From Obrimoposthia wandeli (Eukaryota): a DNA stretch of 64,000 nucleotides. The notes under the pieces were generated by a model. The model was not told where the DNA came from. It was given only the letters and a program-made list of their open reading frames with translations, and did not search any database. The stretch spans positions 1 to 64,000 of the forward strand of contig CDROCS010006344.1 of assembly GCA_977020255.1 (NCBI GenBank). Reading direction: 5' to 3'. The position numbers were made by a program, and so were the translations under genes. How positions within the stretch are numbered: the stretch's first letter is position 1; every line of letters begins with the position of its first letter. This document shows positions 5,658 to 24,262 of this stretch, piece after piece.

Positions 5658-7586
5658 CTACTTAGCTTCTACGAACATACGACCACGCATTTCCATGTGT
5701 AGCGCATGGCAGAACCAGTTGCAGTAGTACCACTGAACCCCTGGCTTATCTGCGATGAAGGTGATGGATGATGTAGCCTGTGGCCCAATTTCCATCTGCA
5801 CACCATGGTTAGTCATACAGAAACCGTGAGTTACGTCTTCGATGTTATCCAGGTTAGTTACAACAACAGTTACTTCGTTGCCTTGCTTAACCTTAAAGTC
5901 AGAAAGACCAAACATCGGTGCAACAGAAGTCATGTAAACACGAACCTTGTTGCCGTCACGAATCACCTTGTTATCTGTTTCAAGAGTTACGCCGTCTTTC
6001 TTAGCCATCTCAACGGTAGGAGCAAAAATTGGATCATCACGAGTCCAAATCTTCTTAGGCTTAACCTTGCTGCGGTGAACCATGATGCAGTCATGAGGCT
6101 CAGCAAACGTTGGGCCATCGTGAACAAGCTTCATTTCATCGCCAGAAATATCGATCAACTGATCGTTTTCAGGACGTAGTGGGCCTACTGGTAAGAATCT
6201 ATCTTTCGAGAACTTACAAAGTACAACTAACCACTTACCATCTGCATCACGAGTTTCACCCATGGTGGTATGGTTGTGTCCTGGCTGGTAATGAACATCT
6301 AACTTCTGACGAAGGTAGTTAACTTTTTCACCGTTATAAGCGGCAACAGCGTCTTTTACATTCCACTTAGCAATCTGGCTATCTAGGAACAAGGTAGTAT
6401 AAGCATTACCCTTGTTATCAAATGCAGTGTGTAGTGGCCCTAAACCTAGTTCAGGTTCAGCAACAACAGTATCGCGAGGCTTGATTTTGTCAGCGAATAA
6501 ATCATCTAACTTATCAATAGCAATCAAAGAAACGGTAGGTGATAACTTACCATTGATCGCAAAGTACTCACCACCTGGAGAGGTGTTAACACCGTGTGGA
6601 GACTTAGGTACAGGGATATAACGAGTTAATTTAGACCCTTTACGACCATCCAATACAGGAATGTTATTGCCGTTATAGTTCTTGAACTTGCCCGCTTTAA
6701 CAGCCGCTTCACAGCGTGCTAGGCTGAAAACAACAACGTGGTCACGTTCAGAAGAAACCATTTCGCCAAGTGTCATGCCCATTTCAGAGTTATAACAAGT
6801 AGAAGCAAAATACTTACCGTCATAATCAGCGTCGGTATTATCTAGGTTGCCATCAACCATTACTTGGAAAGAAACTTCCATAGTTTCAGCATCGATAACG
6901 TTAAACAATGAACGGTAAGTGCTTACGTCTTCCATCGACGCTTTACCGTCGTTATTCATTGGGATTTCGAATTCGCCGTTACAAATCACATACTTAGTAT
7001 AAGGTACTTTTTGTACACGCAGACCGTGAACAGCTTGTACGTTAGGGACAGTAATGATTTTATCAGTTTTCATTACATCACAACGAATACGGGCAACACG
7101 AGAGTTAGCTTTATCGTTGATGAAAACATACTTACCGTCATAACGACCGTCTTGCATGCTCATGTGCGGGTGATGTGAATCACCTGCTAACAAATGAGCA
7201 CTATCGCCTTTAATACGCTTAGATTCGTTGGTTAGACCCCAGCCGGTAGCACTGTCGATATTGAATACAGGAATACGCATTAGCTCACGCATTGATGGAA
7301 TACCTAGGATGCGAACTTCACCTGAGTGACCACCACTCCAGAAACCATAGTATTCGTCTAGCTCACCAGGGTGAACGACAGCGCTATTCGCGGCTTCAGA
7401 CGCTTGAGCTTTTGCAGAAGCGGCGAACATTGCAGCGGTCATTGGAATTGCACCCGCAGCAGTGGCAACAGCACCAGCACCTAGAAAACCACGACGGCTT
7501 ACTTCTAGTTTGCTTTCTTCCTGGTTTACTACAGGAATATCAACGCTTGTATCAATCTGATCAACTGGATTTTCTTTGTTATCCAT
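5658..7586 (-). CDS. nosZ: TAT-dependent (clade I) nitrous-oxide reductase
   Basis: Twin-arginine SRRGFLG, CuZ motif DSHHPH, CuA motif [12 protein letters not shown]. Start placed at 7586 (AAGGA RBS); the ORF track start is 7607. Confidence 0.98.
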
Positions 7587-7656
7587 TTTATTTTCCTTAT
7601 CTATCATTAAAATTCTTTAGTTTTAATCTTCTGAGTCTTAATTCGTACTGCTCGTA

Positions 7657-9822
7657 CTAAGACGTCTTATCAATAATTCGAATGGCTTCTGCCGGTGTCG
7701 CTTTTTGTTTTTGGCGCTTAAGCTTTTTCTGCTTAGCAACAAGAGGCGGACACTTATTTTCATTTTGATACGTTACTTGGCAATCGAGGCAGTGATGACA
7801 TTCTCTTAAATTAATATCGCCATTTTTTTCGATAGCACCAATCTCACATTCAACCGCACATAGCTGGCAAGGTTCGCCGCATTCTTTGCGACGTTTTAGC
7901 CAATCGAATAAACGAATACCCGATGGAATTGCTATTGCGGCACCTAATGGGCAAACATAACGGCAATACACCTTACGACTGAATATGGATACAAAAATCA
8001 AAGCGCTGGCATAGAGAATAAACGGCCAGTCACGATCGAAATTTAATAAGAAAACGGTTTTAAAAGGTTCAACTTCGGCGTAAACCTCTGCAGTTTGCAA
8101 AGACTCTAAAGACAAACCAAATAGGGCGAAAAGAATTAAATATTTAACGGCCCATAAGCGTTCGTGTATGGCGAAAGGCACAACGTATTGAGGGATCTTT
8201 AACTTAACCGCTAGCTCACCGACTAATTCTTGTAAGGCACCAAAAGGGCATAACCAACCGCAGAAGATACCGCGTCCCCATAATAAGAGAGTCACTGCGA
8301 TGAACATCCAGATACAGAAGATGATGGGATCGAGTAGAAACGTTTCCCAATGAAAATCTGACATCAAGGCTTTCATAAACGTAAGCACGTTGACGATGGA
8401 GACCTGCCCTAAAGAATACCAACCGACAAAAAGCACTGTATAAATTAAGAATGCGCGACGGAAGGCGTGTAGAAAGCGTGGGAACGTCACTAACCAGTCT
8501 TGCAGGAAGATAACAATGATGATTAAAATCATGCTGATTATTAATATAGTAACCGGCACTTGTTTAGCAATCCAAACCTGCTGCCACATAGGTAGGTCAG
8601 AGATATTCTGTTCAACGATAGGGCGAGTTAGGTAGTCTTCAATTGGCATGTAATGAGTTTTGAAACTACTGAAAAGGCTATCCAGCGGTCCAGTCTGACG
8701 ACGAACTAATAATTCAATTTCCCATTCGCTACCCGGATCAAATTTGTGATGATCACGGATAACGAAAATAGACATTTCTTTAAAACGTGGAGAGCCTTCT
8801 GAATAAATATCATTAATACGATATTGGTCTAGATCACGAAAGCTGAAAACGTTATCACCTTGGTGAATTTGAATTCGATCAAAAATACCACCACGAACAT
8901 AACCCGAGCCTTTAAAAGAAAAGCCATTGCCCATGAGTGCAAGTGCGTGCTCACCTTCTTTCAATTCATTTTGTAGCCATTTAAATTCGCTATCGCCAAT
9001 AAGGTTGCGACCAATGGTCGGAATATTAAGCTGGGTATAATAAAGGTCGATGAATGCAGCATTAGCTTCTTCTTCTGAAAGAGGTTCTGCAAGTTCACCC
9101 TCAGTACCTGCAAAGGATTGTTCAATCTGATCATTGCTCAGCACCATGCGACGGATAGAACCATCACCAGTTAGCTTAAGCCAATTACCTTTAGTAAAAA
9201 CGTCTTGCTTGATATCAGCAATGGGTTGCTGGTCAACTTCATCGAATTCTATAATACCTTTATTTTTAGCCACCATTTTGGCAGCTCGCATAATGCCCAA
9301 ATTAACCACCATGACGGTGACAGTTGCACCTGATAGGCCATCAATGTGAATGCTTTCATCTGCTCCTTGGCCGCCAATCTTTACGAGGTCAGTCGACATC
9401 AATCCTGCGTATTGATCTGTAAACGTATGAAGTTTGTGCTCAGGAATACCGACTAATAAAATGGGTTCGTGATGTTCTAATACATTAACGGCGATGATTT
9501 TTCCGTCAGTATCGATCGATACTAGGCTATTTACGGGTTCGCCAGAGTAAGCAGGAATCAGTGCAATATCATCGGTTTCAAATGAATAGCCGATAATTGT
9601 GTCGTCTTTTATAATCGTCCAAACAGACAGCTCACCTTCTTCATCAGAGGACGATTTTATGCCAATCGATGATGCTTCTGGGAACGCCGCTTCTATTAAA
9701 GGTTCAGCAGGTTTTGCGGGGCTAATGATTAAGCCACCGGCCAATGCCATGGTAGACGTGAGAAACATAAGCATAAGCAAAAATATATTTTTGCTAAAAA
9801 TTGCATTACTTAACTTGTTCAC
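7657..9822 (-). CDS. nosR: NosR (FMN-binding, 4Fe-4S membrane regulator/electron donor)
   Basis: DGLSGATVT FMN-attachment motif, FCGWLCPFG and YCRYVCPLGA motifs, C-terminal CxxCxxC Fe-S motifs; directly upstream of nosZ. Confidence 0.96.
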   Translation of the reverse strand: MNKLSNAIFSKNIFLLMLMFLTSTMALAGGLIISPAKPAEPLIEAAFPEASSIGIKSSSDEEGELSVWTIIKDDTIIGYSFETDDIALIPAYSGEPVNSLVSIDTDGKIIAVNVLEHHEPILLVGIPEHKLHTFTDQYAGLMSTDLVKIGGQGADESIHIDGLSGATVTVMVVNLGIMRAAKMVAKNKGIIEFDEVDQQPIADIKQDVFTKGNWLKLTGDGSIRRMVLSNDQIEQSFAGTEGELAEPLSEEEANAAFIDLYYTQLNIPTIGRNLIGDSEFKWLQNELKEGEHALALMGNGFSFKGSGYVRGGIFDRIQIHQGDNVFSFRDLDQYRINDIYSEGSPRFKEMSIFVIRDHHKFDPGSEWEIELLVRRQTGPLDSLFSSFKTHYMPIEDYLTRPIVEQNISDLPMWQQVWIAKQVPVTILIISMILIIIVIFLQDWLVTFPRFLHAFRRAFLIYTVLFVGWYSLGQVSIVNVLTFMKALMSDFHWETFLLDPIIFCIWMFIAVTLLLWGRGIFCGWLCPFGALQELVGELAVKLKIPQYVVPFAIHERLWAVKYLILFALFGLSLESLQTAEVYAEVEPFKTVFLLNFDRDWPFILYASALIFVSIFSRKVYCRYVCPLGAAIAIPSGIRLFDWLKRRKECGEPCQLCAVECEIGAIEKNGDINLRECHHCLDCQVTYQNENKCPPLVAKQKKLKRQKQKATPAEAIRIIDKTS

Positions 9823-13445: not shown

Positions 13446-14741
13446 TTAAGCCAATACCTTATCTCTTTCAATATTTACAGCGTTAGTAATATGCAATGCG
13501 GGAGCAGTTTCAGTCGTATTAATGATGGACTGTTCAATATTCCTAATTACAAAATCCATCATCTTTTCTACCCTTCCTCCATCTAGTTGATGAGGAGAGC
13601 GCATTATTATTTCGATACCTTTGGGATGGCCAGCGAGAGTCACAAAAAGAGCGGTAGTTTCAAATTCTGGTGGAATAAAATAGCTCTTTATGGCACTAAA
13701 ATCAGAACCACTAAACTGATCAACGTTCAATAACCCTAAGTTTGAAATGACTCCGGTGGTTCTGAATAGACTGCTCTTTTGACGTTTTTCAATGAGCTTA
13801 TTATTGCTGTTTCGAATGGTTGACGTTGGCTTTAGTTTAATAAATAGAAATAATTTAAAGAAACGCGGGATTTCAGTTTCTTTCTTTTCAAGTAGTTGCT
13901 GTTGTATGTCTAAATTCCAATCTTCTGCCGTTGTATTTAGATTCACGTTAACCACAATTCCCCCAGTTAAGTTTGCTGTAGAATTTAAACCTTCACGGTG
14001 GGGGCGCATATCAACAGGTATTTGAAAGCGAACACAGTCTTCGCCATTAAGTCGCGCATAACGCGCTATTTCTAGAGCGACCTTTGCAAGTAGACCCTTA
14101 TGCTTACCTAAGAGTGTTTTACGTACCCAGCGAGAAGGCTTTTCTAAAGTTTGCACGGATTGAAGTTTTACTGATCCAGTCGCGGCTGATACATCTCTTC
14201 CAAGGCTGCTTGCTTTAGCGTGGTCATTCAGTGACAAGGCTAATTGCATGTCATTAATAGGGCTATTCTCTCCAACAGGGACTTCTCCGCGTAAACAGCG
14301 AAAAATGTCATTAGCAAAATGCAGCGTACCACGGCCATCCATTGCACCATGGTGCGATCGTATGATAATGAAATGTTTATTATCATCAGCATGCACTAAT
14401 ACTACTTCTGAGGTTGGTCCCGATCGTGCTGGTAGAGGCTTTAATAAAAATTCAGCGTTATCATTGCTACGTCCATCCCAATGACTTCTTACAACGCGTA
14501 ACGGCGTAGAGTGATCGCTATCGACCCATCGGCTAAAGCCTAGGTGGCCCACTAATTTTACTCGGCTGCCCGGATTTGCATAAGATGCTTTGATAACTGC
14601 TCTTCTTAGTTTTTCATCATCCATAGCGCCTTGGCCTTCGACAACCATTTGATTTACACAGGGGTTATGTAATAGCGTGATTTTTACTATCACCATGACA
14701 TAATAACGCTCAATAGTTGAAAGGGGTCTTGAATATGACAT
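13446..14741 (-). CDS. Stand-alone condensation-domain-like / CoA-dependent acyltransferase
   Basis: Canonical HHxxxDG (RSHHGAMDGRG), N-terminal RPLSTIER, and IPVDMR and VISNLG motifs of the C-domain/PapA5/alcohol acyltransferase superfamily. Confidence 0.7.
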   Translation of the reverse strand: MSYSRPLSTIERYYVMVIVKITLLHNPCVNQMVVEGQGAMDDEKLRRAVIKASYANPGSRVKLVGHLGFSRWVDSDHSTPLRVVRSHWDGRSNDNAEFLLKPLPARSGPTSEVVLVHADDNKHFIIIRSHHGAMDGRGTLHFANDIFRCLRGEVPVGENSPINDMQLALSLNDHAKASSLGRDVSAATGSVKLQSVQTLEKPSRWVRKTLLGKHKGLLAKVALEIARYARLNGEDCVRFQIPVDMRPHREGLNSTANLTGGIVVNVNLNTTAEDWNLDIQQQLLEKKETEIPRFFKLFLFIKLKPTSTIRNSNNKLIEKRQKSSLFRTTGVISNLGLLNVDQFSGSDFSAIKSYFIPPEFETTALFVTLAGHPKGIEIIMRSPHQLDGGRVEKMMDFVIRNIEQSIINTTETAPALHITNAVNIERDKVLA

Positions 14742-14762
14742 TAGAATTGCTCCACTTTATAA

Positions 14763-17700
14763 TTATTTTTTAGCATCTTGCCAGCCAGCTTCCCAACTAG
14801 AGTCAAGAACATCATCACGGTAAGGGTTCTTTTTCTTGTGTTTATTGCTGCTGCCTTGTTGGAAACCTCGTTGGTAGGCTTGCTCGACTAAATCAGTTGT
14901 ATTTTTTTTACGGCGAATTTTATTGACGAGTTCGGATGAGCGAAGCAACCATTGGTCGAGTAATAAATAACTGGCAGGTACTAGCAGCAAGCTAATAAAA
15001 GTCGCAAATAGCACACCAAAGGCTAGCGATACCGCCATGGGAATTAAAAATTGAGCTTGGATGCTGGTTTCTAAAATTAAGGGTGTTAAGCCCACAAACG
15101 TCGTTAAAGACGTTAAGATAATTGGGCGAAAGCGTTTTTTACCTGCGTCACATACCGCAATGAATACAGCTTGGCCTTGTTCTCTTTGCTGATTGATATA
15201 ATTCATCAATACAAGATTATCGTTCACCACAACACCACTCACGGCGACCATACCCACAAATGACCAGAGTGTTAGTTCTAGGTTCAAAAATAGGTGTCCG
15301 ACTAGCGAACCTAATAAACCAAAAGGAATGGCAAAAAGTACAAGCAATGGTTGGCTATAAGAAGCAAAAAGAACGGCCATCATTAGATACATCACTAAAA
15401 TGGCAACGAGATAACCTTTAGTTAATATTTTTAAAAATGACGCGATGCTTTTTTGTTGCCCTGCGGTATTCCAGCGAACGCCTTGATGATTATCAATAAT
15501 CTGATCGAGCTTGAATGTTTGTAATTCATTTTTAATTTGTGAAATAGAGTTTTTACTACTATCTACATAGGCACTAACGGATACGATTCGCTGTTGTTCG
15601 TAACGTTTAATATGATTACGTGCGGGCTGGTAATCGATACTAGCGATAGACGACAGGCTAACGTATTGATTGCTGGCTAACTTAATGGGTAAGTTTTCTA
15701 AGTACCACATTGACGAACGTTCATTTTCTGGTAAGCCTAACCAGACATTAATTTCGTCATTTTGGGTTTGAATATTCTGAACGTCACTGCCTTGATAAGC
15801 GCGATGGACCTGTGATAAAACCTGCTCTAAGGATAGGTCTAGGGCGATGGCATTATCTTTCAGTTTGATGTTGGCTTGTTGCTTAGCAGTGCTAATCGAA
15901 TCACGAATATCATAGCTTCCATCATATTCGGCAAGGATTTCTTTTAACTCTTTTGACGCGCGGGTTAGCTGTGCAAGGTCATAACCTGAAAACTCAATAT
16001 TAATATCGGGTTTAGCAGGATTTAAACTGGCACTAAACTTAAGATCTTCAATGTCGGTTATTGGGCCAGTAAGTTCACGCCAGCGTTTGACTAGCTCTTG
16101 GCCACTGTATTGACGGTTGTTACCAGTAGAAAGCTCTAGTGTTACTTGTGCACTATGATCTAGATTTTTATCAAGCTGTTGATTTGAGATTTTATTCTTA
16201 GGACCAATGACCGAATATATATGTAAAATAGACGGTGATGCCGGGAGCATAGTTTCTTCTTTCAACTGGTTGGCGGCAGTCACCAACTGTTGAATTGCTG
16301 CTTTCGTTTTATCTCGTGGAGATCCTTCAGGAAAAATAACATTAGCAATCACAACATCCGCTTCAATCGCAGAAAATAACGCGACTCGCATCCATCCTGT
16401 AGAGACAACGACCATGAAAATAATAAAAATCAAACTAAAGCTAACGATGACTAATCCTTTATTGTGAAGAGATTTTACCAATAGCGGCTGGTAAATATTT
16501 TCGATAAAGGCATCGAGATTATTGCTAAAAGAATTTTGTATTCTAGTGAGTACGTTAGGTTTTTTATTGGATGTTGGTTTATTTCCAGACAAGTGAGCCG
16601 GTAGTATGTAGATGGATTCTAATAATGAAAATATAAGGGTTAATATAACGACAATAGGAATTGCCTGCATTAACTTACCTTCGGGCCCTGGTAAAAATAG
16701 TAAAGGTAAAAAAGCGACTATACTGGTCGCGATAGCAAAAAATATGGGTTTATAAACCTGATAGGTTCCTTCTAGTGCACCTGCGCTACCATAGTTTCCA
16801 AGCTGGTTTTGTTGATGAACCGACTCTCCGACAACAACCGCATCATCGACTACGATTCCTAGAACTAATATAAATGCAAACAGCGAGATGACGTTAATAG
16901 AGACGTCAAAAAATGGCATCAAAAATAAGCTACCAAAAAAAGATACGGGAATGCCTAGGCTTACCCAAAATGAAAGGCGAGCATTTAAAAACAATAACAA
17001 CACAGTAAAGAGTAATAATAAGCCTGTTAATGCATTATCCAGCAATAAATCTATGCGGCTTTTAAAATGTTTAGAGTCATCTTGCCAAATATGCAATTTC
17101 ATATTATCGGGAATTTTAGCGTTACTAATGTAGCTGTTTAGGCTCTTTGAAATGTCCATTATATTTTGATCACCAATGCGATAAACATCGATGGATACTG
17201 CAGGTCTATTGTCGAAGCTAGCTTGGTTTTCATGGCTGTAGCGGTTGTCACTGATGGTCGCAATATCTTTTAATTTAATTTCTGCACCGTCACTGTTGGA
17301 TATAATAACGATATTTTCAAAACCTTCGCTACTCTCTACTTTTTCATCTGAGGTAATTAAAACATTACCTTCTTGAGTTTTTAGAAGCCCTCCCGGTAAC
17401 TGGCCTGATTGCTGTTGGATTAAATTAGTAATCTGGGAAAATGTTATATCGTATTTTTCTAAGTTGTGAGAAGGGACATTGATCTCAATTTTTGATTGTT
17501 TTATATCTTCAAGGTCAATGATGCTTATGTTCTCGAACTCGAGAAGATCTTGACGTACCTTTCTCATTATTTTTGCTAAATCCGCGTAGTTTGAATCGCC
17601 ACTTAGAATTAATTTAGCAACACGATTACGAACATTCAGTTCTTTTATCTCAGGTAAGCTTGCATCAATAGGCAAGGTATCAGAGCTTTGAATACGATTT

Positions 17701-18029
17701 TTAACTTCATCTAGAATGTTCTTTGTAATAAACCCATCGGCTACATCAATAGTGATAGAGCATAAACCTTCATATGCAGTTGAGGTAAGGTCTAGTGTGC
17801 CGGGGATATCGTAGATACGTTGTTCGATAGGTTTGCAGACGGTCGCTTCAACAGTTTCAACGGTAGCCCCTGGCAAAGTAGTTTGAATGCCGATTCTTTC
17901 TAGCGAGACATTCGGAATAAGTTCCATTCGTGTATCAGGAATAGAGATTAGCCCTAATACGAAGATAGAGAACATAAGCAAGTTAGCTGCAACAGGGTTG
18001 TTGACGAACCACTGAATGGAATAACGCAT
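14763..18029 (-). CDS. RND efflux permease (AcrB/AcrD/AcrF family) with an RMF-like C-terminal tail
   Basis: NPVAANLLM N-terminus, GIVVDDAVVVGE, GVVVNDNLVL and RFRPIILTSLTT; 1088 aa with two large periplasmic loops. Confidence 0.93.
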   Translation of the reverse strand: MRYSIQWFVNNPVAANLLMFSIFVLGLISIPDTRMELIPNVSLERIGIQTTLPGATVETVEATVCKPIEQRIYDIPGTLDLTSTAYEGLCSITIDVADGFITKNILDEVKNRIQSSDTLPIDASLPEIKELNVRNRVAKLILSGDSNYADLAKIMRKVRQDLLEFENISIIDLEDIKQSKIEINVPSHNLEKYDITFSQITNLIQQQSGQLPGGLLKTQEGNVLITSDEKVESSEGFENIVIISNSDGAEIKLKDIATISDNRYSHENQASFDNRPAVSIDVYRIGDQNIMDISKSLNSYISNAKIPDNMKLHIWQDDSKHFKSRIDLLLDNALTGLLLLFTVLLLFLNARLSFWVSLGIPVSFFGSLFLMPFFDVSINVISLFAFILVLGIVVDDAVVVGESVHQQNQLGNYGSAGALEGTYQVYKPIFFAIATSIVAFLPLLFLPGPEGKLMQAIPIVVILTLIFSLLESIYILPAHLSGNKPTSNKKPNVLTRIQNSFSNNLDAFIENIYQPLLVKSLHNKGLVIVSFSLIFIIFMVVVSTGWMRVALFSAIEADVVIANVIFPEGSPRDKTKAAIQQLVTAANQLKEETMLPASPSILHIYSVIGPKNKISNQQLDKNLDHSAQVTLELSTGNNRQYSGQELVKRWRELTGPITDIEDLKFSASLNPAKPDINIEFSGYDLAQLTRASKELKEILAEYDGSYDIRDSISTAKQQANIKLKDNAIALDLSLEQVLSQVHRAYQGSDVQNIQTQNDEINVWLGLPENERSSMWYLENLPIKLASNQYVSLSSIASIDYQPARNHIKRYEQQRIVSVSAYVDSSKNSISQIKNELQTFKLDQIIDNHQGVRWNTAGQQKSIASFLKILTKGYLVAILVMYLMMAVLFASYSQPLLVLFAIPFGLLGSLVGHLFLNLELTLWSFVGMVAVSGVVVNDNLVLMNYINQQREQGQAVFIAVCDAGKKRFRPIILTSLTTFVGLTPLILETSIQAQFLIPMAVSLAFGVLFATFISLLLVPASYLLLDQWLLRSSELVNKIRRKKNTTDLVEQAYQRGFQQGSSNKHKKKNPYRDDVLDSSWEAGWQDAKK

Positions 18030-19222
18030 TACAAGGCCTCAGCGACGGTAGGCGTCTTAAGCTTATTTTCTTTTTCTGAACGATGGCGAGCCTTGGGATC
18101 GACCAATAGCCCATCAACAAGGTTACTGAATGAGCCTGTGACAATACGTTCCCCTAATTTTATGCCTGAGGTAATATAAATTTTATCTTTTCCTCGATAG
18201 ATCACATCAACAGATCTTCGTGACAAACGATCTGCTGTGCTAATCGTCCACAGTTTGTTCTCGGCTTGTAAGCTTTCCCTGGGTAAAATATGTAAATCTT
18301 TTTGTAAGTTACCGGTAATCGTTGCTTGGATAAATGAACCAGGTAGCAGTGGTTTAGTCGCTGAATTATTACTATCACTATTATTGACAGTGGCGATGAC
18401 ATAGAGCAGTTGATTTTTATCTCTTTCACCCTCCGTGCGGGTAATCGTGCCGTGCCAAGTGATGCTGTTATCTTGGAAGTTTTGAATTAATACATTAGGG
18501 AAAACATCCAGCTCCTCTGTTTTCTGTTCCGAATATTGCAGGCCTAATAATGATATTTGATGATCATTGAGAGGGAGTCGTATTTCTACTGTTTCAGTAC
18601 CATAAACTTTTGCTAGCTCTTGGCTTGCCTGCAAGTACTCTCCTGTATGAATATTTGCCAGAATAACTTTGCCACTAATGGGTGCCTTGATAGAGGTTTT
18701 CTCTAATTGTTTTTGAGCATAACTTAAGGCTGCTCTGGCAGCTTCTACTTGGCTATTGGCGTATCGCAACTGCGGAACATACAAGGCGTAGTCTGAAGCG
18801 TTTCTACCGGCACCTTTCTTAGCGACGCGGGCTTTGGCTTTGGTTTCAAAATAATGTAATTTCGCTTGATCTAAGCTTGATTGATTTTGTGCGATGTCGA
18901 GAATGAAAGGCTGCTGGTCGAGCTGAACCAGCAATTCATCTTGTTGAACTAGGCCGCCATTAATTAGTTGTGCGTTGACAAAAGTTACCAGTCCAGGAAC
19001 TTCGCTTGTTATGTGTCGAATCTGTGAAGGCGTTGCTTTTCCTCGACTAAAGATCGGGATAGATATTTCAGCTGATCTTGCCACGGTGTAAGGAACGACA
19101 GGAATGTTAACGATAATCTCAGACTTTTCTGGAATAGGTTTATTATCCGTTAATAGATAAATAGAACCTGCCGCTATAAAAAGCAGTGCAATGAGCTTTA
19201 TGTTGAAACTAAATGAATTCAT
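18029..19222 (-). CDS. RND efflux periplasmic adaptor (MFP) subunit
   Basis: N-terminal TM anchor, lipoyl-like halves (ITSEVPGLV; IKAPISGKV), coiled hairpin; TAATG overlap with the permease gene. Confidence 0.9.
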   Translation of the reverse strand: MNSFSFNIKLIALLFIAAGSIYLLTDNKPIPEKSEIIVNIPVVPYTVARSAEISIPIFSRGKATPSQIRHITSEVPGLVTFVNAQLINGGLVQQDELLVQLDQQPFILDIAQNQSSLDQAKLHYFETKAKARVAKKGAGRNASDYALYVPQLRYANSQVEAARAALSYAQKQLEKTSIKAPISGKVILANIHTGEYLQASQELAKVYGTETVEIRLPLNDHQISLLGLQYSEQKTEELDVFPNVLIQNFQDNSITWHGTITRTEGERDKNQLLYVIATVNNSDSNNSATKPLLPGSFIQATITGNLQKDLHILPRESLQAENKLWTISTADRLSRRSVDVIYRGKDKIYITSGIKLGERIVTGSFSNLVDGLLVDPKARHRSEKENKLKTPTVAEAL

Positions 19223-20231
19223 TATGGTTTTTATCTTCGATTAAATTATTTTTCCAGTCGTTCAAGCACTTCTGTGTCAAACTTATATCCTGACAGATCA
19301 TTGGGTGTAACTTTAAACCTAGCGTTAGCTGTCCATGCCATTCCATGATACCAGTCGACACGGGATAGTTTTTAGTACCGATCCCACAGCTAACCCATAC
19401 TTCATCTGTATTTTCAGCTGGATTTTTATCACCTTGTAGCGGCCACGCTCCTAAGTAACTATAAGAACCCGCATAGAAATTCTTTTTGCTAATACTATTG
19501 TAAATATAACGAACCCCAGGTTTGCCAACCAACTTTCCAATATGCGCTAACTTCCAAGTGCTCCAGTGTTCTTTTAGTTTTATCTTGCTTTTAATTTCTT
19601 CCTGTAACTGCTTGGGGGTAATGTAGTTATTTAAGCAGATATTAATACCAGAGGAATAATTGCTCGTATCATTACCTAGAGAAATGGCACCACGGAGGTT
19701 TACGGGATAAAACCAATAATAATTTTGATTACCATCGATTAGGTTGTCTGCAATCGCTTTATTGAGAGACCACATTAGAAAGGTACTGAAAGCAACGCGA
19801 TTCTTCTTCGCATTTTTTTTAATCTGTAATGTGCTTTCTTTATCAAAAAAAGTATTCAAAATAGCGGCAGAATTATTATTGCTGCAAGGAAAATTGTTCT
19901 TCCAACGGATACTTTTAGAGGGGGTGTAGGTAGATTTTTTGTTTCTCTTCTTCTCTAATTTTCTGATCTGGTAGAGCTTCCAAGAACTTGGTTCTGTTTT
20001 CTCACCACTTTGTGGAAGTTGACGACAAGGGTAACCTTGTTCTCTTAAAATGGTCGCTATACCTCCGATACCATCCATTTTACTGTGTGGAAATGTGTGC
20101 CATTGAGTATCACCATTGGTTTTGTTCATAGGACCAATGTTCATTGCATCGCTGATGCCTAGCTCTTTTCTTACATCAAACCACATTGCGATGTAGTCTT
20201 TGGGGGATTTTGAAATTTTAGAGGCTTTCAT
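19209..20231 (-). CDS. Hypothetical protein, condensation/acyltransferase-like
   Basis: xHxxxDG motif (FPHSKMDGIG), YPVNLRG motif and a C-terminal SYLG segment resembling acyltransferase/C-domain folds. Confidence 0.5.
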   Translation of the reverse strand: MKASKISKSPKDYIAMWFDVRKELGISDAMNIGPMNKTNGDTQWHTFPHSKMDGIGGIATILREQGYPCRQLPQSGEKTEPSSWKLYQIRKLEKKRNKKSTYTPSKSIRWKNNFPCSNNNSAAILNTFFDKESTLQIKKNAKKNRVAFSTFLMWSLNKAIADNLIDGNQNYYWFYPVNLRGAISLGNDTSNYSSGINICLNNYITPKQLQEEIKSKIKLKEHWSTWKLAHIGKLVGKPGVRYIYNSISKKNFYAGSYSYLGAWPLQGDKNPAENTDEVWVSCGIGTKNYPVSTGIMEWHGQLTLGLKLHPMICQDISLTQKCLNDWKNNLIEDKNHNEFI

Positions 20232-20241
20232 GCTTCTCTCC

Positions 20242-21351
20242 TTATAAACGTGAAGGTTCTAAATAAAATAGTGTGGGTGCATCCTGTTCCGCTTGTTGCT
20301 TTAGGTACTCTGGTTTATCACCATAAATGGCAAGGTAGTGATTGCTGGTTAGGGTATGGCTTTTAAAGCCTTGTAGAGCGTTATGTAGAGGATCACGCTT
20401 ATCAAAACCAATGATCAATGCATCGAAAGACGAGTCTTTATATTCACATAGGATATTAGATAACATACTGCTGAGTATGGCTGGCTGATTATCTTTGATT
20501 AGAATCGAGTGCAAGCTAATATAGTTGGCTAAAGTTCCTGCTGTAGGCAGCTTTAACCCACCTAATACTTTACTCATTATGTTGTTAGCATGGCGTAGAA
20601 TTTTTATGCTGCCGTGATAAGACAAGAATCGGGTTTGTTTAAATTCTTTTTGGTCCCAAGCACCGACAACGCCAATTAATTCTTGATTATTGTAGTATAA
20701 AAAATAATCACTAATACTCAGATTGCGATAATACGCATCTTGACCGCCGATTTTTTTAAAATCATAACAAGGATAGAACTCTTTATATTTTGCATTCAGA
20801 TCAAAAAATCGTTGGATGTCGTCGATATCATCTGCAGAGGCACGTCGAACCTGCTTGCATGATGGTGAATATGATTTGTTGAGTGCTACCATGTGTGTAA
20901 TGAACTGGCCAGCATCGTGATAAGTGGGTAAGGATAGTCGCCCGCTGCCAACGGTATCGACAGAAGCTTTATTCTCATCAAGAATCACGGTTTGCATCCA
21001 TTCATCTTGCATTAATTCTTTATACTTCTTGAACAGACGGAATAACGTACGACCGCCTTTATAATCTTGATGAATTCTTAAGTCATTGCCATAGCGTGTT
21101 AAGCGTTTTTTGCCATTAACGTAGACTTCTCTTTTTCCTATACTGAAAGAGGCGACCAATCTGCTATTGTGAAGATCTTCCATTAACCAGACCTCTGGTT
21201 CGCTTGTTGTGACACCTGTAGCGTGAAAGAAATTTGGCTGCCGTTCAAAATTTAAACGAATACTGCCTTCTTGTGGAGTTTCATTTATTAATCGCAATAA
21301 TGCAGATGAATCTTCAGCTTGAGCTAAGCGAATATTGTATCGCAGGCTCAT
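20242..21351 (-). CDS. GNAT-family acyltransferase (tandem-GNAT size)
   Basis: IRLAQAED N-terminus, motif A-like DLRIHQDYKGG, N-x-x-S; 369 aa is consistent with a double GNAT fold. ATGA overlap with the GH3 gene. Confidence 0.65.
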   Translation of the reverse strand: MSLRYNIRLAQAEDSSALLRLINETPQEGSIRLNFERQPNFFHATGVTTSEPEVWLMEDLHNSRLVASFSIGKREVYVNGKKRLTRYGNDLRIHQDYKGGRTLFRLFKKYKELMQDEWMQTVILDENKASVDTVGSGRLSLPTYHDAGQFITHMVALNKSYSPSCKQVRRASADDIDDIQRFFDLNAKYKEFYPCYDFKKIGGQDAYYRNLSISDYFLYYNNQELIGVVGAWDQKEFKQTRFLSYHGSIKILRHANNIMSKVLGGLKLPTAGTLANYISLHSILIKDNQPAILSSMLSNILCEYKDSSFDALIIGFDKRDPLHNALQGFKSHTLTSNHYLAIYGDKPEYLKQQAEQDAPTLFYLEPSRL

Positions 21352-23048
21352 GCGGGTTCACCGGTCTTCGTCTGTGATTCATTATTTTTTGCATCTTGAG
21401 AATTATCAAGACCTTTGTTCATTAAGAAATTTTGGTTTTGCCATAAAATCAACGGCTCTACTTTAATATTGCCTTTTACCATGCCCTGCTCAACCTTATG
21501 GTGAGCGTATAAAGCTAAAGCATCCTGTTTAATAGAAACTCGAGCAGGGTCTAGCTGTCCAAGTTCACGTGCTAGCTGATAGTGAAAATGTTGTGAAAGC
21601 ATCTTCTCTAAAGACTGCGCAAGTTGATCTTCTCTTGCTATTAAGCAGTCTTCAGTTAAATCACTGTCATTTTCACAAAGTAATACATAATAGGGCTTAT
21701 ATTGCTGTTTGTTTGCCGGCATTGCGATGAGCGTGATCGGTGTAATACCTTCTTCAAGATTAAAGTCATTTAGTAATTGCACTGCCGTTTCTGGTGATAG
21801 TTTCTCTCCGACCATATCGGTGCCGTCTATTCGACCAATAAATTCAAAACAAGGGCAGCTATTAATAAACCCTGTCACTTTTAATTGATCTTTCATGGCG
21901 TAGCGTAACAAGCCATTAGCAGAGCTAATAATAGGACGAACACACATTCCTTCTGTCAGTTGCCAGCTAAGCATAATTTTTTGACTGGACAGCTCTTCAA
22001 ACTCATAGAAGTGGCTAGTGACCGCGAGCGGGAATTGATTTCTATAAGGGATACTCGTTACCCCCTCAGTTGCCCATAGCCCCTTACCCTGGAATTCACT
22101 ATGGGGAAATATCCGCCTCAATTTATCAGCCCAAATCTTAGATGAGGATGTATCCCAGGCACTTATTAGTGCTAATTTTGGCCAGATAGAGGCTGTGAAT
22201 TTCGCATCAATTTTGCCATCCCATTCATATAATATTTTAGATGACGCTACATTCTTTGGTGTTTCTATTTTTTCTAAACCAGAATATTTACTCGGCCATT
22301 CGCCAGAGGCTAATACTTGGGTAATGTCATTTTTATGGAGCTGAATAAACTCCAATAGACTCAGAGCAAAGGTCGGACTCCAAACTGAAATAAAGCTTAA
22401 ATCCGAGCATGCTAGAAGGTAGCAAGCGGTTGCGAAAAATGATTCGTCTGAAGACTCTGCCAACGAAATTGATTCTGGTACGGCCATCGTCCCCGTCATA
22501 AATACCTGCTTCCACCAAGGGAGCAGCTGTAGATCGTTATTGATGCTCGCCGTTAATTTATTACGTAAATCACTCGGCACCCAAGAAAGAGACCAGTAAT
22601 GTTTTCCATTTTTTATCTTTGGATAATTACGGTACATATCTGCTAACCAAGGAGCAATCGCATTATCTAATTCTTCAAGAAATGGCTTTGTGTAAGGGAT
22701 CCATTTGATTTTTGAAGTAGAACCACTCGTCGGCTGGTAGCGTGTGCAATCATTATTTGTTAAAAGATTAATCTGCTCAGTTTGTTGTTGTTCTATTTGA
22801 GCGGACCAGTAATCATAATCTGTAATAGGGACTTGGTTTTGAAAGTCTTGCAAGCTGCTATTAGAAGAAAGGTTGTGCCGAATGCCATTTTCGCTACCGA
22901 CAATATTAGCTATAATATGTGATAACAATATTTTCTGTGTCGATTCAATATTCCTACAGGCAATAATAAATTTATCTTCACCTTTTCTTGAAAGTAGATA
23001 AGATGCCTGGTGTAGGGCGCGGCTTATGAGAGCGTGTATTATTTGCAT
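21348..23048 (-). CDS. GH3 (auxin-responsive promoter) family acyl-adenylating amide synthetase
   Basis: VPITDYD, PTSGSTSKIKWIPYT (P-loop-like), ATEG, FYEFE, GLLRYAMKD, FIGR and GEKL motifs of GH3/ANL enzymes. Confidence 0.88.
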   Translation of the reverse strand: MQIIHALISRALHQASYLLSRKGEDKFIIACRNIESTQKILLSHIIANIVGSENGIRHNLSSNSSLQDFQNQVPITDYDYWSAQIEQQQTEQINLLTNNDCTRYQPTSGSTSKIKWIPYTKPFLEELDNAIAPWLADMYRNYPKIKNGKHYWSLSWVPSDLRNKLTASINNDLQLLPWWKQVFMTGTMAVPESISLAESSDESFFATACYLLACSDLSFISVWSPTFALSLLEFIQLHKNDITQVLASGEWPSKYSGLEKIETPKNVASSKILYEWDGKIDAKFTASIWPKLALISAWDTSSSKIWADKLRRIFPHSEFQGKGLWATEGVTSIPYRNQFPLAVTSHFYEFEELSSQKIMLSWQLTEGMCVRPIISSANGLLRYAMKDQLKVTGFINSCPCFEFIGRIDGTDMVGEKLSPETAVQLLNDFNLEEGITPITLIAMPANKQQYKPYYVLLCENDSDLTEDCLIAREDQLAQSLEKMLSQHFHYQLARELGQLDPARVSIKQDALALYAHHKVEQGMVKGNIKVEPLILWQNQNFLMNKGLDNSQDAKNNESQTKTGEPA

Positions 23049-23875
23049 TATGAGGGCTCCATCATAAGTTCTTCTTTCTTTTCAGTATCCGTATTTGTTT
23101 CTGCTATAACTTTCACTGTGGAATGTTTTACTACAGATCTCTTCTTTTTGAGCGACAGCATATTCTTACGCACAAAATTCCACATCATATGTATAGATAC
23201 TTCACCTACACAGGGCAATTCTGTTCCTTGCTGCCAGGATGGATTGAGCTTTGTGAAATGACGAATTTTTGGATTGTCGTCTGTCATATCGGTTGTTATT
23301 TCTGCGACATCATCCTTTAAATATTGATAATCATTACCAAAATTTAATAGTCGGTTTTCTTTGTTGTAAGCTGATGGATATAGTTGCTCGCAGTACTCAT
23401 CAACAATAGATTCTAGCTTGATGTTATTTTTTTTATGACTAGGGTAGTGTTTTGGAAAGTTATTAGTCAGTAATAAATAAGTCTTATACCCTTTAGATAT
23501 CAATAGCCAAAATACAGAGGTCTTTGGGTTTTTTATTTTTGTTTTTAATAACTGTTTAACAAATGTTTTCTGTAGTGCTTTATTCCCCCAGAATTCTTTT
23601 TTTACTACGGTATCTCCACTAAAGATGCCTATAGATCTCTCACCATCTTTCATTATTTCTAGTTCAGTCCATGTGCTGAAACCTACTATTTTATCACTAG
23701 ATTTTTCTTGTAAAATAATGACGCCTGTCTTCTTCCCCATATCAGTAACAAAGTTGTGGAGGTCGGCATTATGATAGTACTGAACAAATACCTTATGCAT
23801 CTCTAATAGTTGAGGTACAGATATGTGTTTTATTTTTTTAAAACAGGCCGTTAGTTTTGTTTTATCATTTTTCAT
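23048..23875 (-). CDS. Conserved hypothetical protein, probable GNAT-like fold, coupled to the GH3 gene
   Basis: IVGFST, FSGDTVV-x3-WG, WLLISKGYKTY and NPSWQQGTELPC motifs; TAATG overlap with the GH3 gene. Start placed at 23875 (ORF track 23917). Confidence 0.55.
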   Translation of the reverse strand: MKNDKTKLTACFKKIKHISVPQLLEMHKVFVQYYHNADLHNFVTDMGKKTGVIILQEKSSDKIVGFSTWTELEIMKDGERSIGIFSGDTVVKKEFWGNKALQKTFVKQLLKTKIKNPKTSVFWLLISKGYKTYLLLTNNFPKHYPSHKKNNIKLESIVDEYCEQLYPSAYNKENRLLNFGNDYQYLKDDVAEITTDMTDDNPKIRHFTKLNPSWQQGTELPCVGEVSIHMMWNFVRKNMLSLKKKRSVVKHSTVKVIAETNTDTEKKEELMMEPS

Positions 23876-24262
23876 AAAAATCTCACGCACGCAGAAATTC
23901 AGGCAAGAGAATACCATCAGAAAATACTGAGGAATTGTCCATTTATAATGTTATTAATAGCGAGTTGACTAAGTGTTTGTTTAGTTTTCTAAGACTGAGC
24001 TTATCGGTCGAGTGATTTTCATGATTGCGCATCCATTCTTTTTTAGACTAGTAATGATTTATTATTATTTTTTATTATTCAGCTTACATGCTGATTTAAC
24101 GCCGCCAGTAAATCATAGTTAAAAAAGATTAAAAGTAATTTCTATCGTAATTAATACGTTAGTACCTCAAATATTACGGGGCAGGGTAAGTGTTTTGTAA
24201 ATGGCGAAATAGGAGAATAAATATCCTTTGTTAAGGAAGTTATTTTTGCTACGGGAGGGTAG

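What the first reader, a model, noticed from the sequence alone, without database searches (positions are those of the whole stretch)
14763..14915. RND permease ends in a ribosome-modulation-factor (RMF)-like domain
Seen: after the last TM helix, the AcrB-family protein carries a 50-aa tail, RRKKNTTDLVEQAYQRGFQQGSSNKHKKKNPYRDDVLDSSWEAGWQDAKK. Established (RMF sequence recalled from memory): E. coli RMF reads KRQKRDRLERAHQRGYQAGIAGRSKEMCPYQTLNQRSQWLGGWREAM. It binds the ribosome to drive 90S/100S hibernation dimers. The two align without gaps over E-x-A-x-QRG[FY]Q-x-G-x9-PY-x8-W-x2-GW-x2-A, including the basic N-terminal stretch; only the RMF Cys before PY is replaced (Asn). RND C-termini face the cytoplasm. 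Inference: this is an RND-RMF fusion that could tether or silence ribosomes at the membrane, couple export to translational state, or reuse the small Rmf/CrpP-type fold as an interaction module. I know of no described RND-RMF fusion.
Basis: partly seen in the sequence, partly recalled or inferred. Interest (0 to 1): 0.8.

Follow-up and report, generated by a model that had tools for sequence, protein, structure and literature searches.

The report
RND pump with RMF-fold cytoplasmic tail
A bacterial export pump really does end in a small domain related to the ribosome-silencing protein RMF, and the fusion is old and widespread, but the domain lacks the residues RMF uses to grip the ribosome, so it is more likely a docking or regulatory handle than a ribosome tether.

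Summary
The 1088-aa RND permease (window 14763-18029, minus strand) ends in a domain that passes Pfam RMF (40.2 bits, cut-off 27.9) and the NCBIfam RMF equivalog. It aligns without gaps to E. coli RMF and is predicted as the RMF two-helix hairpin. Contigs from other studies cross the junction without indel or stop.

The fusion is ancient. It occurs in 20 of 28 GH3-operon genomes of the family and in about 37 of 401 sampled species of the order, always beside amide-forming biosynthetic genes (GH3 or NRPS). The core evolves as slowly as the pump body. One nested clade has lost it.

The ribosome-tether reading is not supported. Lys/Arg at RMF's 16S-contact positions are largely absent from the tails (K5 and R11 0%, R8 3%, R15 19%, R3 23%). 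Net charge is -7 to +2, against +4 to +7 for canonical RMF. The "basic N-terminal stretch" lies in a fast-evolving linker. All 42 tails score closer to a free, acidic "WEAGW" RMF paralog than to canonical RMF.

Best reading: a cytoplasmic protein-docking or regulatory module whose partner is unknown. No paper describing it was found, although JGI and Pfam annotation already flag it.

The parts
14763..18029 (-). RND permease with a C-terminal RMF-fold tail (1088 aa plus stop codon)
   Evidence: ORF list and translation. PF00873 covers residues 5-1024 at 508.7 bits and PF04957 covers 1042-1087 at 40.2 bits. It is 88-89% identical to Oleispira MAG orthologs.
14769..14894 (-). RMF-fold core (residues 1046-1087): helix 1, a 12-residue loop containing NPY, and helix 2 with the SWEAGWQDA motif
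   Evidence: AF2 model with helices at residues 17-32 and 45-59 of the 60-aa piece. The top three PDB fold hits are all RMF. The AFDB top clusters are RMF or unnamed small proteins. dN is 0.06-0.09 at dS about 0.9-1.7, similar to the pump body.
14895..14957 (-).
   Evidence: dN is 0.24-0.28 against close orthologs, and identity falls to 5-14% in other genera. Linker length is about 17-25 aa in GH3-type pumps and about 46-91 aa in NRPS-type pumps.
14958..15062 (-). TM12 region (about residues 990-1024), the last membrane helix before the tail
   Evidence: It aligns to TM12 of solved RND pumps and is 77-100% identical across orthologs.
18029..19222 (-). RND membrane-fusion (adaptor) protein, 397 aa
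   Evidence: TIGR01730 at 133 bits and HlyD_3/HlyD_D23. Its TM helix starts at residue 3, so there is almost no cytoplasmic part. It is syntenic in all loci.
19209..20231 (-). u340: a basic (net +19) cytoplasmic protein with an HxxxDG motif, probably a CAT-fold acyltransferase
   Evidence: Motif and charge. Atlas leads point to AATase/PapA/Condensation. It is present in only some tail-bearing operons.
20242..21351 (-). u369: a GNAT-like acyltransferase candidate
   Evidence: Atlas feature hits to GNAT clusters at 0.98. It is syntenic in all GH3-type loci.
21348..23048 (-). GH3-family adenylate-forming amido synthetase, 566 aa
   Evidence: PF03321, PF23571 and PF23572. It lies upstream of the pump in every GH3-type locus.
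23048..23917 (-). u289: first gene of the conserved operon, function unknown, net charge +12
   Evidence: Synteny. No Pfam or NCBIfam hit.
13446..14741 (-). u431: free-standing condensation-like protein with the HHGAMDG motif, directly downstream of the pump
   Evidence: 29% identity over 394 aa (E 1e-44) to the condensation-like gene of the NRPS-type clusters, and both carry HHxxxDG. It is present only in the Oleispira-like subgroup and in G015, and was not found in four other tail-bearing genomes.

Best explanation
The gene encodes the inner-membrane RND exporter of a small biosynthetic operon (u289, GH3 amido synthetase, GNAT-like and CAT-fold acyltransferases, adaptor protein, pump, condensation-like enzyme). 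After TM12 and a roughly 21-residue linker that is poorly conserved, the chain folds into a 42-residue two-helix hairpin with the RMF fold. By RND topology this sits in the cytoplasm, giving three copies per pump trimer. The domain does not come from the lineage's canonical rmf. It belongs to a distinct, mostly acidic branch of PF04957 with the signature [VL]-E-x-AY-x-x-G ... P[YF] ... [SA]W[ED]AG[WY]-x-D. That branch also exists as free 66-71 aa proteins. It keeps the residues that build the fold but not the Lys/Arg that canonical RMF uses to bind 16S rRNA. It therefore most likely does not act as a hibernation factor. It more likely acts as a docking or regulatory module that brings a soluble cytoplasmic partner to the exporter, linking export of the cluster's amide-type product to its synthesis or to a regulatory input. 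Shown here: homology, fold, the reality of the fusion, its age and spread, purifying selection, one secondary loss, and the absence of the rRNA-contact residues. Inferred: cytoplasmic location, partner binding, and the nature of the exported product. The partner has not been identified.
For: Homology and fold. Fusion real. Conservation: 22 clusters carrying the tail; about 19 of 86 family genomes by Pfam, corrected to 20 of the 28 genomes that have the GH3 operon; about 37 of 401 sampled species of the order. The core has dN 0.06-0.09, about the same as the body, while the linker has dN 0.24-0.28. Context is always biosynthetic: a GH3 operon in 19 family loci plus L066, L078 and L095, and NRPS clusters (giant NRPS, aminotransferase, condensation-like gene, MFS_3, type-II thioesterase) for most order-level fusions. 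Non-canonical nature: the Lys/Arg fraction at R3, K5, R8, R11 and R15 is 1.00, 1.00, 0.45, 0.85 and 0.95 in 20 canonical RMFs, against 0.23, 0, 0.03, 0 and 0.19 in 31 tails. Net charge has a median of +5 in canonical RMFs and -4 in tails, with contact residues taken from bioRxiv 10.1101/382572. All 42 tails score higher on the free-paralog HMM than on the canonical HMM, with medians of 36.6 and 19.2 bits. Genomes with the fusion also keep a separate canonical rmf, for example G045 and G059. Precedent that RMF-fold proteins act through protein contacts: PA3049/BatR is reported not to mediate hibernation and binds the kinase SrkA by Co-IP and two-hybrid (PMC13411936).
Against: No partner has been identified. 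The one complex prediction (tail with GH3) gave no verdict. No operon gene co-varies with the presence of the tail: u340 and u431 are missing from some tail-bearing operons, and the tail-less clade keeps u289, GH3, u369 and u340. The free paralogs sit in a housekeeping context that gives no functional clue. The window's own tail is the most basic of all (+2) and keeps a Lys at the R3 position and Arg at R15, so a weak nucleic-acid affinity in the Oleispira subgroup is not excluded. Loss of the tail in one clade shows that the operon can work without it.
Confidence: 0.55

Rival explanations
1. Ribosome tether or silencer: the tail binds the 30S subunit as RMF does, holding or inactivating ribosomes at the membrane or coupling export to translational state.
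For: True RMF-family homology and fold. The window's tail is mildly basic (+2) and keeps 2 of the 5 rRNA-contact positions as Lys/Arg. Membrane-anchored ribosome-binding proteins exist in E. coli (YqjD/ElaB/YgaM; from my own knowledge).
Against: Across 31 distinct tails, K5 and R11 are never basic, R8 is basic in 3%, R15 in 19% and R45 in 3%. The median net charge is -4. The invariant MK[RK]QKRD N-terminus, which intertwines with S7 and contacts rRNA, is replaced by a variable linker that is attached to TM12. RMF sits in a cavity ringed by S2, S7, S9 and S21 and is capped by S1, which would be hard to reach for a domain held about 20 residues from a trimeric membrane protein (inference). The tails cluster with an acidic paralog and not with canonical RMF. 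The same genomes keep a canonical rmf.
Confidence: 0.07
2. Intramolecular or oligomeric role: the three tails of a trimer bind each other or the pump's own cytoplasmic face, stabilising the trimer or gating proton and substrate cycling, with no external partner.
For: The only proteins always present with the tail are the pump and its adaptor. No operon gene co-varies with the tail. After tail loss the pump body sits on a long branch of 1.24, as would be expected if body and tail had co-adapted.
Against: The same domain type exists as a free protein in genomes where no RND gene lies nearby. Linker length varies from about 17 to 91 residues, which fits a tethered docking module better than a fixed plug. 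There is no direct test.
Confidence: 0.2
3. Ligand or cation sensor: the conserved acidic surface (E10, D33/D34, E41, D46 in RMF numbering) binds a metal ion or small molecule that tunes export.
For: Strongly conserved acidic positions specific to the tail branch.
Against: No conserved Cys or His and no known ligand-binding motif. A 42-residue hairpin offers little pocket. Nothing here tests it.
Confidence: 0.08
4. Neutral passenger or annotation artefact: a chance read-through or a decaying relic of an adjacent small gene, with no function.
For: One clade has lost the tail and keeps the operon.
Against: The tail is retained down to about 40% body identity in two cluster types. The dN of the core is close to that of the body. 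In independent metagenomes, core variants are 4 synonymous to 1 replacement. There are no stops or frameshifts in more than 40 assemblies.
Confidence: 0.03

Closest known systems
Ribosome modulation factor, RMF (E. coli; PF04957; PDB 6H4N, 4V8G, 2JRM)
   Same: Homologous two-helix hairpin with the same core residues (A12, Y/F13, G16, F/Y17, G20, P30, W40, G43, W44). It aligns to the tail without gaps over 46 residues.
   Different: RMF is a free, strongly basic protein of about 55 aa with an invariant MK[RK]QKRD N-terminus and R11, R15 and R45. The tail is fused to a membrane pump and lacks these residues. As a family the tails are acidic and form a different branch.
BatR (PA3049), the Pseudomonadales long-form 'RMF' (PMC13411936)
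   Same: An RMF-family protein from the same bacterial order. It is reported not to mediate ribosome hibernation and to work by binding another protein, the kinase SrkA. This is the best functional precedent for the tail.
   Different: BatR is free and basic, has the canonical N-terminus, and carries an extra C-terminal helix. The lineage's own BatR-type gene is separate from the tail (L031 and others). No tail-kinase link was shown here.
Free 'WEAGW' RMF-like paralogs (66-71 aa; for example L052:5971-6168), uncharacterised
   Same: These are the closest relatives of the tail (37-44% identity, with the same signature and acidic character). Every tail scores higher on their profile than on the canonical RMF profile.
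   Different: They are stand-alone genes in a conserved tex-gshA-X-fliL-dsbB-rsd neighbourhood, not next to any pump. Their function is unknown.
AcrB/MexB/MdtB-type RND permeases (PF00873)
   Same: A 12-TM RND body with an adjacent adaptor gene, the TM4 Asp-Asp pair, and the conserved Arg in TM11.
   Different: The body is a divergent member (397 bits on NF033617 against a cut-off of 1250). The TM10 relay Lys of AcrB-type pumps aligns to Asn-Asp here. It has an extra folded C-terminal domain and is embedded in a biosynthetic operon, not a drug-efflux locus.
MmpL-type mycobacterial RND lipid exporters (MmpL7-PpsE coupling; the MmpL3 C-terminal cytoplasmic domain). From my own knowledge, not tested here.
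   Same: RND exporters of biosynthetic-cluster lipids that use an extra soluble part to contact the synthase or partner proteins. This is what the proposed docking role would work like.
   Different: Different RND subfamily, different organisms, and unrelated extra domains. This is an analogy only.
YqjD/ElaB/YgaM, membrane-anchored ribosome-binding proteins of E. coli. From my own knowledge.
   Different: They are unrelated in sequence (DUF883 family with a C-terminal anchor). No such domain was found in this protein.

Membership tests
RMF family (Pfam PF04957 / NCBIfam NF011162) | Profile score above the curated cut-off | tested here: met
   PF04957 scores 40.2 bits against 27.9 on the whole protein and 46.8 on the tail. 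NF011162 scores 40.4 against 40 on the whole protein (borderline) and 46.7 on the tail.
RMF family (Pfam PF04957 / NCBIfam NF011162) | Two alpha-helices joined by a linker of about 13 residues (the RMF fold) | tested here: met
   The AF2 model has helices at 17-32 and 45-59 with pLDDT about 90 in the helices. The Foldseek PDB top three are 9iot_y, 2jrm and 4v8g_AV, with TM 0.62-0.72. The AFDB top clusters are named RMF. E-values are weak (0.07-1) because the domain is so small.
Canonical, ribosome-binding RMF | Conserved basic residues that hydrogen-bond 16S rRNA (R3, K5, R8, R11, R15) | tested here: not met
   The window tail has K, T, L, Q and R at these positions. Across 31 tails the Lys/Arg fractions are 0.23, 0, 0.03, 0 and 0.19, against 1.00, 1.00, 0.45, 0.85 and 0.95 in 20 canonical RMFs. 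The contact list comes from bioRxiv 10.1101/382572.
Canonical, ribosome-binding RMF | A free basic N-terminal extension (MK[RK]QKRD) that intertwines with S7 | tested here: not met
   This position is occupied by the linker to TM12, which is not conserved (5-14% identity between genera and dN 3-4 times that of the core).
Canonical, ribosome-binding RMF | Strong net positive charge | tested here: not met
   Canonical RMFs carry +4 to +7. Tails carry -7 to +2, with a median of -4, and the window tail is +2.
Canonical, ribosome-binding RMF | Binds 30S and drives 90S/100S dimer formation | not testable with these tools
   This needs ribosome co-sedimentation or complementation of an E. coli rmf mutant.
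'WEAGW' RMF-like branch (defined here) | Signature [VL]-[ED]-x-AY-x-x-G ... P[YF] ... [SA]W[ED]AG[WY]-x-D, and a higher score on the free-paralog profile than on the canonical profile | tested here: met
   Alignments. All 42 tails score higher on the paralog HMM, and the window tail scores 38.6 against 27.3 bits.
RND permease (PF00873, AcrB/AcrD/AcrF family) | Full-length profile match and an adjacent membrane-fusion protein gene | tested here: met
   PF00873 covers residues 5-1024 of the protein and positions 2-1020 of the 1021-position profile, at 508.7 bits. An adaptor gene overlaps the start of the pump gene (TIGR01730 at 133 bits).
RND permease (PF00873, AcrB/AcrD/AcrF family) | AcrB-type proton-relay residues (TM4 Asp-Asp, TM10 Lys, TM11 Arg) | tested here: inconclusive
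   The TM4 'VVDDAVVV' motif is present, and the TM11 Arg in 'RFRPI' aligns to the solved pumps. The TM10 Lys of the solved pumps ('SAKNA') aligns to Asn-Asp ('VVNDN'). The relay is probably arranged differently, and function cannot be judged from this.
CrpP-type small plasmid/ICE proteins ('Rmf/CrpP') | Detectable sequence similarity to CrpP genes | tested here: not met
   A tblastn search of the tail against 72,556 plasmid records found only canonical rmf (37% identity) and nothing annotated crpP. No paper links the two.
YqjD/ElaB/YgaM membrane-anchored ribosome binders | DUF883-type domain | tested here: not met
   No such Pfam hit at E up to 1.

The most novel reading that the evidence does not exclude
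The acidic 'WEAGW' RMF fold, both free and fused, is a second, non-hibernation use of the RMF scaffold. In the fused form it would recruit a conserved cytosolic regulator (for example an SrkA- or Hanks-type Ser/Thr kinase, by analogy with BatR-SrkA) or the cluster's adenylate-forming enzyme to an RND exporter, so that export of a secondary metabolite is physically wired to stress signalling or to synthesis. The still more radical reading, that it does engage ribosomes at the membrane by a non-canonical mode, is not strictly excluded for the mildly basic Oleispira tails. I put that sub-case at about 0.07.
Probability: 0.3. Interest if true: 0.75.

Novelty: new variant of a known kind. Interest (0 to 1): 0.5.

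Why it matters
RND pumps are usually thought to have no folded cytoplasmic domains. Here a whole clade of pumps linked to biosynthetic clusters, in marine hydrocarbon-degrading Gammaproteobacteria (Oleispira, Ketobacter, an Oleiphilaceae MAG and others), carries a conserved domain that has been under selection since before the GH3-type and NRPS-type clusters diverged. That points to an unrecognised layer of control or synthesis-export coupling. It also shows that Pfam 'RMF' hides at least two functional classes: basic ribosome binders and an acidic branch of unknown function. Automatic names such as 'AcrB/ribosome modulation factor' should therefore not be read as evidence of ribosome hibernation. 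Culturable strains that appear to carry the fusion (Oleispira antarctica RB-8, inferred only from genome size, and Ketobacter alkanivorans) would make it testable.

Tried and rejected
1. Complex prediction of the tail with the GH3 enzyme scored 0.00, so no verdict. My alignments were not used. This is not evidence for or against binding.
2. u431 (the condensation-like protein) as an obligate partner. It is the only soluble protein with a homolog in both cluster types. However, it is absent from many tail-bearing operons and was not found in four such genomes with this query. Rejected as a universal partner.
3. u340 as partner. It is absent from several tail-bearing operons and present in the tail-less clade.
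4. The adaptor protein's cytoplasmic part as partner. Its TM helix starts at residue 3, so nothing is available to bind in this organism.
5. A Rosetta-stone link through the free paralogs. None of them lies near RND, GH3 or adaptor genes, and their neighbours are housekeeping genes.
6. A CrpP relationship. No hit in the plasmid collection and no relevant literature.
7. Close RND relatives without a tail (P0057, P0104, P0109). Their contigs are short and their contexts unrelated, so they are uninformative.
8. SrkA/YihE kinase presence. It is found in all five genomes tested, including the tail-less one, so it does not discriminate.
That the organism has a separate rmf is inferred from relatives G045 and G059.
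10. Literature searches for the architecture found nothing relevant.
Full report
OBSERVATION. The ORF at window 14763-18029 (minus strand) encodes 1088 residues and ends with the 50-residue tail exactly as quoted. Pfam gives ACR_tran over residues 5-1024 (508.7 bits) and RMF (PF04957) over residues 1042-1087 at 40.2 bits, against a gathering cut-off of 27.9. The isolated 60-residue tail scores 46.8 bits. The NCBIfam RMF equivalog NF011162 scores 40.4 against a cut-off of 40 on the whole protein and 46.7 on the tail. An AlphaFold2 model built on 34 aligned tails and paralogs shows two helices joined by a 12-residue loop (mean pLDDT 77, about 90 in the helices). The three best Foldseek matches in the PDB are all RMF structures (9iot_y, 2jrm, 4v8g_AV; TM 0.62-0.72). 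The best AlphaFold-DB clusters are small proteins named RMF or unnamed. E-values in these fold searches are weak (0.07-1) because the domain is tiny, but the ranking is unambiguous.

THE FUSION IS REAL. Contigs from other sequencing studies cross the TM12-tail junction: X1 record 1 spans 14600-15300, X2 record 7 spans 14784-15045, and X6 record 20 spans 14717-15251. The only indels lie at 14671-14693, between genes. Of the 18 listed variants inside the gene, 13 are synonymous, 5 are conservative replacements and none creates a stop. Within the RMF-like core the count is 4 synonymous to 1 replacement.

WHERE THE WINDOW COMES FROM. The assembly that holds the window has 1.35 Gb in 6,912 contigs and at least ten RMF-family loci of clearly different types. 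The window is therefore a bacterial contig inside a mixed or host-associated assembly. The pump is 88-89% identical to those of two Oleispira MAGs.

DISTRIBUTION. A word-indexed search restricted to the tail found 22 protein clusters of 1088-1110 aa (one of them an 804-aa fragment). All carry precomputed PF00873 plus PF04957. Several are named by JGI 'multidrug efflux pump subunit AcrB/ribosome modulation factor'. In the 86 species-level genomes of the same GTDB family, 19 have a Pfam RMF match at the end of a roughly 1,100-codon frame (one of the 19 is cut by a contig end). Complete genomes such as G045 (4,406,383 bp, which I recall as about the size of the Oleispira antarctica RB-8 chromosome) and G059 carry both this fusion and a separate 67-69-codon canonical rmf. 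The tail is therefore an extra paralog and not a displaced rmf. An exhaustive search of 1.84 billion representatives with TM12 plus tail found further fused representatives at 42-57% identity, with linkers of 20 to about 100 residues. A scan of 401 evenly sampled species of the GTDB order with the tail profile found about 37 genomes (roughly 9%) with the match at the end of a 1,085-1,178-codon frame. One of these is Ketobacter alkanivorans. NCBI names all of these plain 'efflux RND transporter permease subunit'. Three literature searches found no paper on the architecture.

CONTEXT. In 19 family loci the order is (u289)-GH3-u369-(u340)-adaptor-pump/tail-(u431), with pump identity ranging from 89% down to 53%. 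The pieces I could check are as follows. GH3 is a full three-domain GH3 protein. u369 looks GNAT-like. u340 is strongly basic, carries an HxxxDG motif, and has leads to CAT-fold acyltransferases. u431 carries HHGAMDG and is homologous (E 1e-44) to a free-standing condensation-like protein found in the other cluster type. That other type holds most of the order-level fusions. It consists of a giant NRPS, a class-III aminotransferase, the condensation-like gene, an MFS_3 transporter, a type-II thioesterase, a long adaptor, the pump with tail, a lipoprotein-like u367, and a convergent Hanks-type kinase. In every case the tailed pump belongs to a cluster built around an adenylate-forming, amide-making enzyme.

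SELECTION AND HISTORY. Against close orthologs, the RMF-like core has dN 0.06-0.09 at dS of about 0.9-1.7, essentially the same as the pump body (dN 0.06). The linker between TM12 and the core has dN 0.24-0.28 and drops to 5-14% identity in other genera. GH3 orthologs occur in 28 of the 86 family genomes. Twenty of these have the tail; G063 carries a W44R change that made Pfam miss it. A group comprising G084, G075, G071, G078 and G037 has the same operon, but its pump stops about 15-20 residues after TM12. In a maximum-likelihood tree of the pump bodies, this tail-less group is a single clade with 100% support. It is nested inside the tail-bearing GH3-context clade (99%) and sits on a long stem of 1.24 substitutions per site. 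The tail was therefore ancestral there and was lost once. The NRPS-context tailed pumps form neighbouring clades, which is consistent with one old fusion, although the deep branches are weakly supported. The tail is useful enough to be kept across deep divergence, but it is not indispensable.

IS IT A WORKING RMF? The 100S ribosome structure paper (bioRxiv 10.1101/382572) states that RMF sits in a cavity ringed by S2, S7, S9 and S21, with helix 1 in an rRNA cleft. Conserved Arg3, Lys5, Arg8, Arg11 and Arg15 hydrogen-bond the 16S backbone. The N-terminal extension intertwines with S7. Glu10, Arg37 and Gln39 touch S1. I aligned 20 distinct canonical RMFs, including those from the same genomes as the fusions, with 31 distinct tails. 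Lys/Arg frequencies, canonical against tails, are as follows: R3 1.00 and 0.23; K5 1.00 and 0; R6 1.00 and 0; R8 0.45 and 0.03; R11 0.85 and 0; R15 0.95 and 0.19; R24 1.00 and 0.39; R37 0.65 and 0.06; R45 1.00 and 0.03. Net charge over the 47 aligned columns is +4 to +7 (median +5) for canonical RMF and -7 to +2 (median -4) for the tails. The window's tail is the most basic of all at +2, with K, T, L, Q and R at the five contact positions. What the two groups share is the fold core (A12, Y/F13, G16, F/Y17, G20, P30, W40, G43, W44). The tails have their own conserved set (E10, Y13, D33, D/E34, V35, L36, S39, E41, A42, D46). It is more simply explained as juxtamembrane positive charge in an AT-rich genome (inference). 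All 42 distinct tails score higher on a profile of free 66-71-residue 'WEAGW' paralogs than on a profile of canonical RMFs, with medians of 36.6 and 19.2 bits. These free paralogs are 37-44% identical to the tail, pass Pfam RMF at 55 bits, and lie in a conserved tex-gshA-X-fliL-dsbB-rsd neighbourhood with no pump nearby. The tail is thus a member of the RMF superfamily but not of its ribosome-binding branch.

MECHANISM. RND termini are cytoplasmic (established for AcrB-type pumps), so each trimer would display three copies of a small, mostly acidic, aromatic-rich hairpin on flexible linkers of about 17 to 91 residues. The best-supported reading is a docking or regulatory module. A recent experimental study gives a precedent within the same fold and the same bacterial order. 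P. aeruginosa PA3049, long annotated rmf, is described as not mediating hibernation, and it binds the Ser/Thr kinase SrkA in Co-IP and two-hybrid assays (PMC13411936). I could not identify the partner. The adaptor has no cytoplasmic segment. u340 and u431 do not co-vary with the tail. The single complex prediction available (tail with GH3) returned no verdict. SrkA-type kinases are present in tail-bearing and tail-less genomes alike. A Hanks-type kinase is conserved beside all 16 NRPS-type loci of that kind, but beside none of the GH3-type loci. An intramolecular role (trimer stabilisation or gating) therefore remains a serious rival. The canonical ribosome-binding role is unlikely, at about 7%.

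VERDICT. The architecture is conserved, widespread and, in the literature searched, undescribed, although automatic annotation already flags it. I class it as a new variant of a known kind and rate its interest as moderate.

Noticed in passing
whole assembly G000 (the window is contig C6344): The assembly has 1.35 Gb in 6,912 contigs and at least ten RMF-family loci of several different types (E. coli-like, Vibrio-like, long-form). The window is therefore a bacterial (Oleispira-like) contig inside a host-associated or mixed assembly, and not part of one bacterial genome.
   Followed up: partly
L068-L080, L083 and L085 (for example L067:14509-15492, minus strand): A Hanks-type Ser/Thr kinase (52-83% identical between loci) sits convergently just beyond pump/tail-u367 in all 16 NRPS-type loci of that kind, and beside none of the GH3-type loci. 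Given the published BatR-SrkA interaction, it is a candidate partner for that clade's tails. L066 has a PP2C phosphatase directly after the pump.
   Followed up: partly
L051-L055, L061 and L062 (for example L052:5971-6168): Free 66-71-aa acidic RMF-like proteins ('MELVE.HWDLENLEKAYRHGF...AWEAGWQDGKEQF') lie in a strictly conserved tex-gshA-X-fliL(-)-dsbB-rsd neighbourhood. They pass Pfam RMF at 55 bits but lack the basic N-terminus. Their function is unknown.
   Followed up: partly
genomes G011-G034, for example G011:C1:2847410-2847541: A third, weaker class of RMF-like small ORFs (22-29 bits, 75-116-codon frames) occurs once per genome in one group of the family, so some species have three RMF-fold genes. 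My canonical-RMF profile did not detect them in the fetched loci L056-L059.
   Followed up: no
window about 15200-15260 (TM10 of the pump): The TM10 relay lysine of solved AcrB/MexB-type pumps ('SAKNA') aligns to Asn-Asp ('VVNDN') here. TM10 therefore resembles TM4 ('VVDDA'), which suggests a proton-relay arrangement different from classical HAE-1 pumps.
   Followed up: partly
window 13446-14741 and 19209-20231: The operon holds two free-standing condensation/CAT-fold-like proteins (u431 with HHGAMDG, and u340 with PHSKMDG and net charge +19) next to a GH3 ligase and a GNAT-like protein. This looks like an NRPS-independent route to an acylated amide product. The only NCBIfam echo for the GH3 protein is OlsH (lyso-ornithine-lipid synthetase) at E 0.016, far below the cut-off.
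   Followed up: partly
window 5658-9822: Nitrous-oxide reductase nosZ (with a TAT signal, propeller repeats and a cupredoxin domain) lies next to a NosR-like FMN-binding/4Fe-4S membrane protein, just beyond the aldehyde dehydrogenase and TPP enzyme genes that flank the operon.
   Followed up: no
L091-L093, L096 and L097: In the tail-less clade the pump, the adaptor and u340 are the operon proteins that have diverged most from the window's versions (about 10 identity points more than in tail-bearing operons of similar depth). u289 and u369 have not. This is a possible hint of which parts co-adapted with the tail.
   Followed up: no
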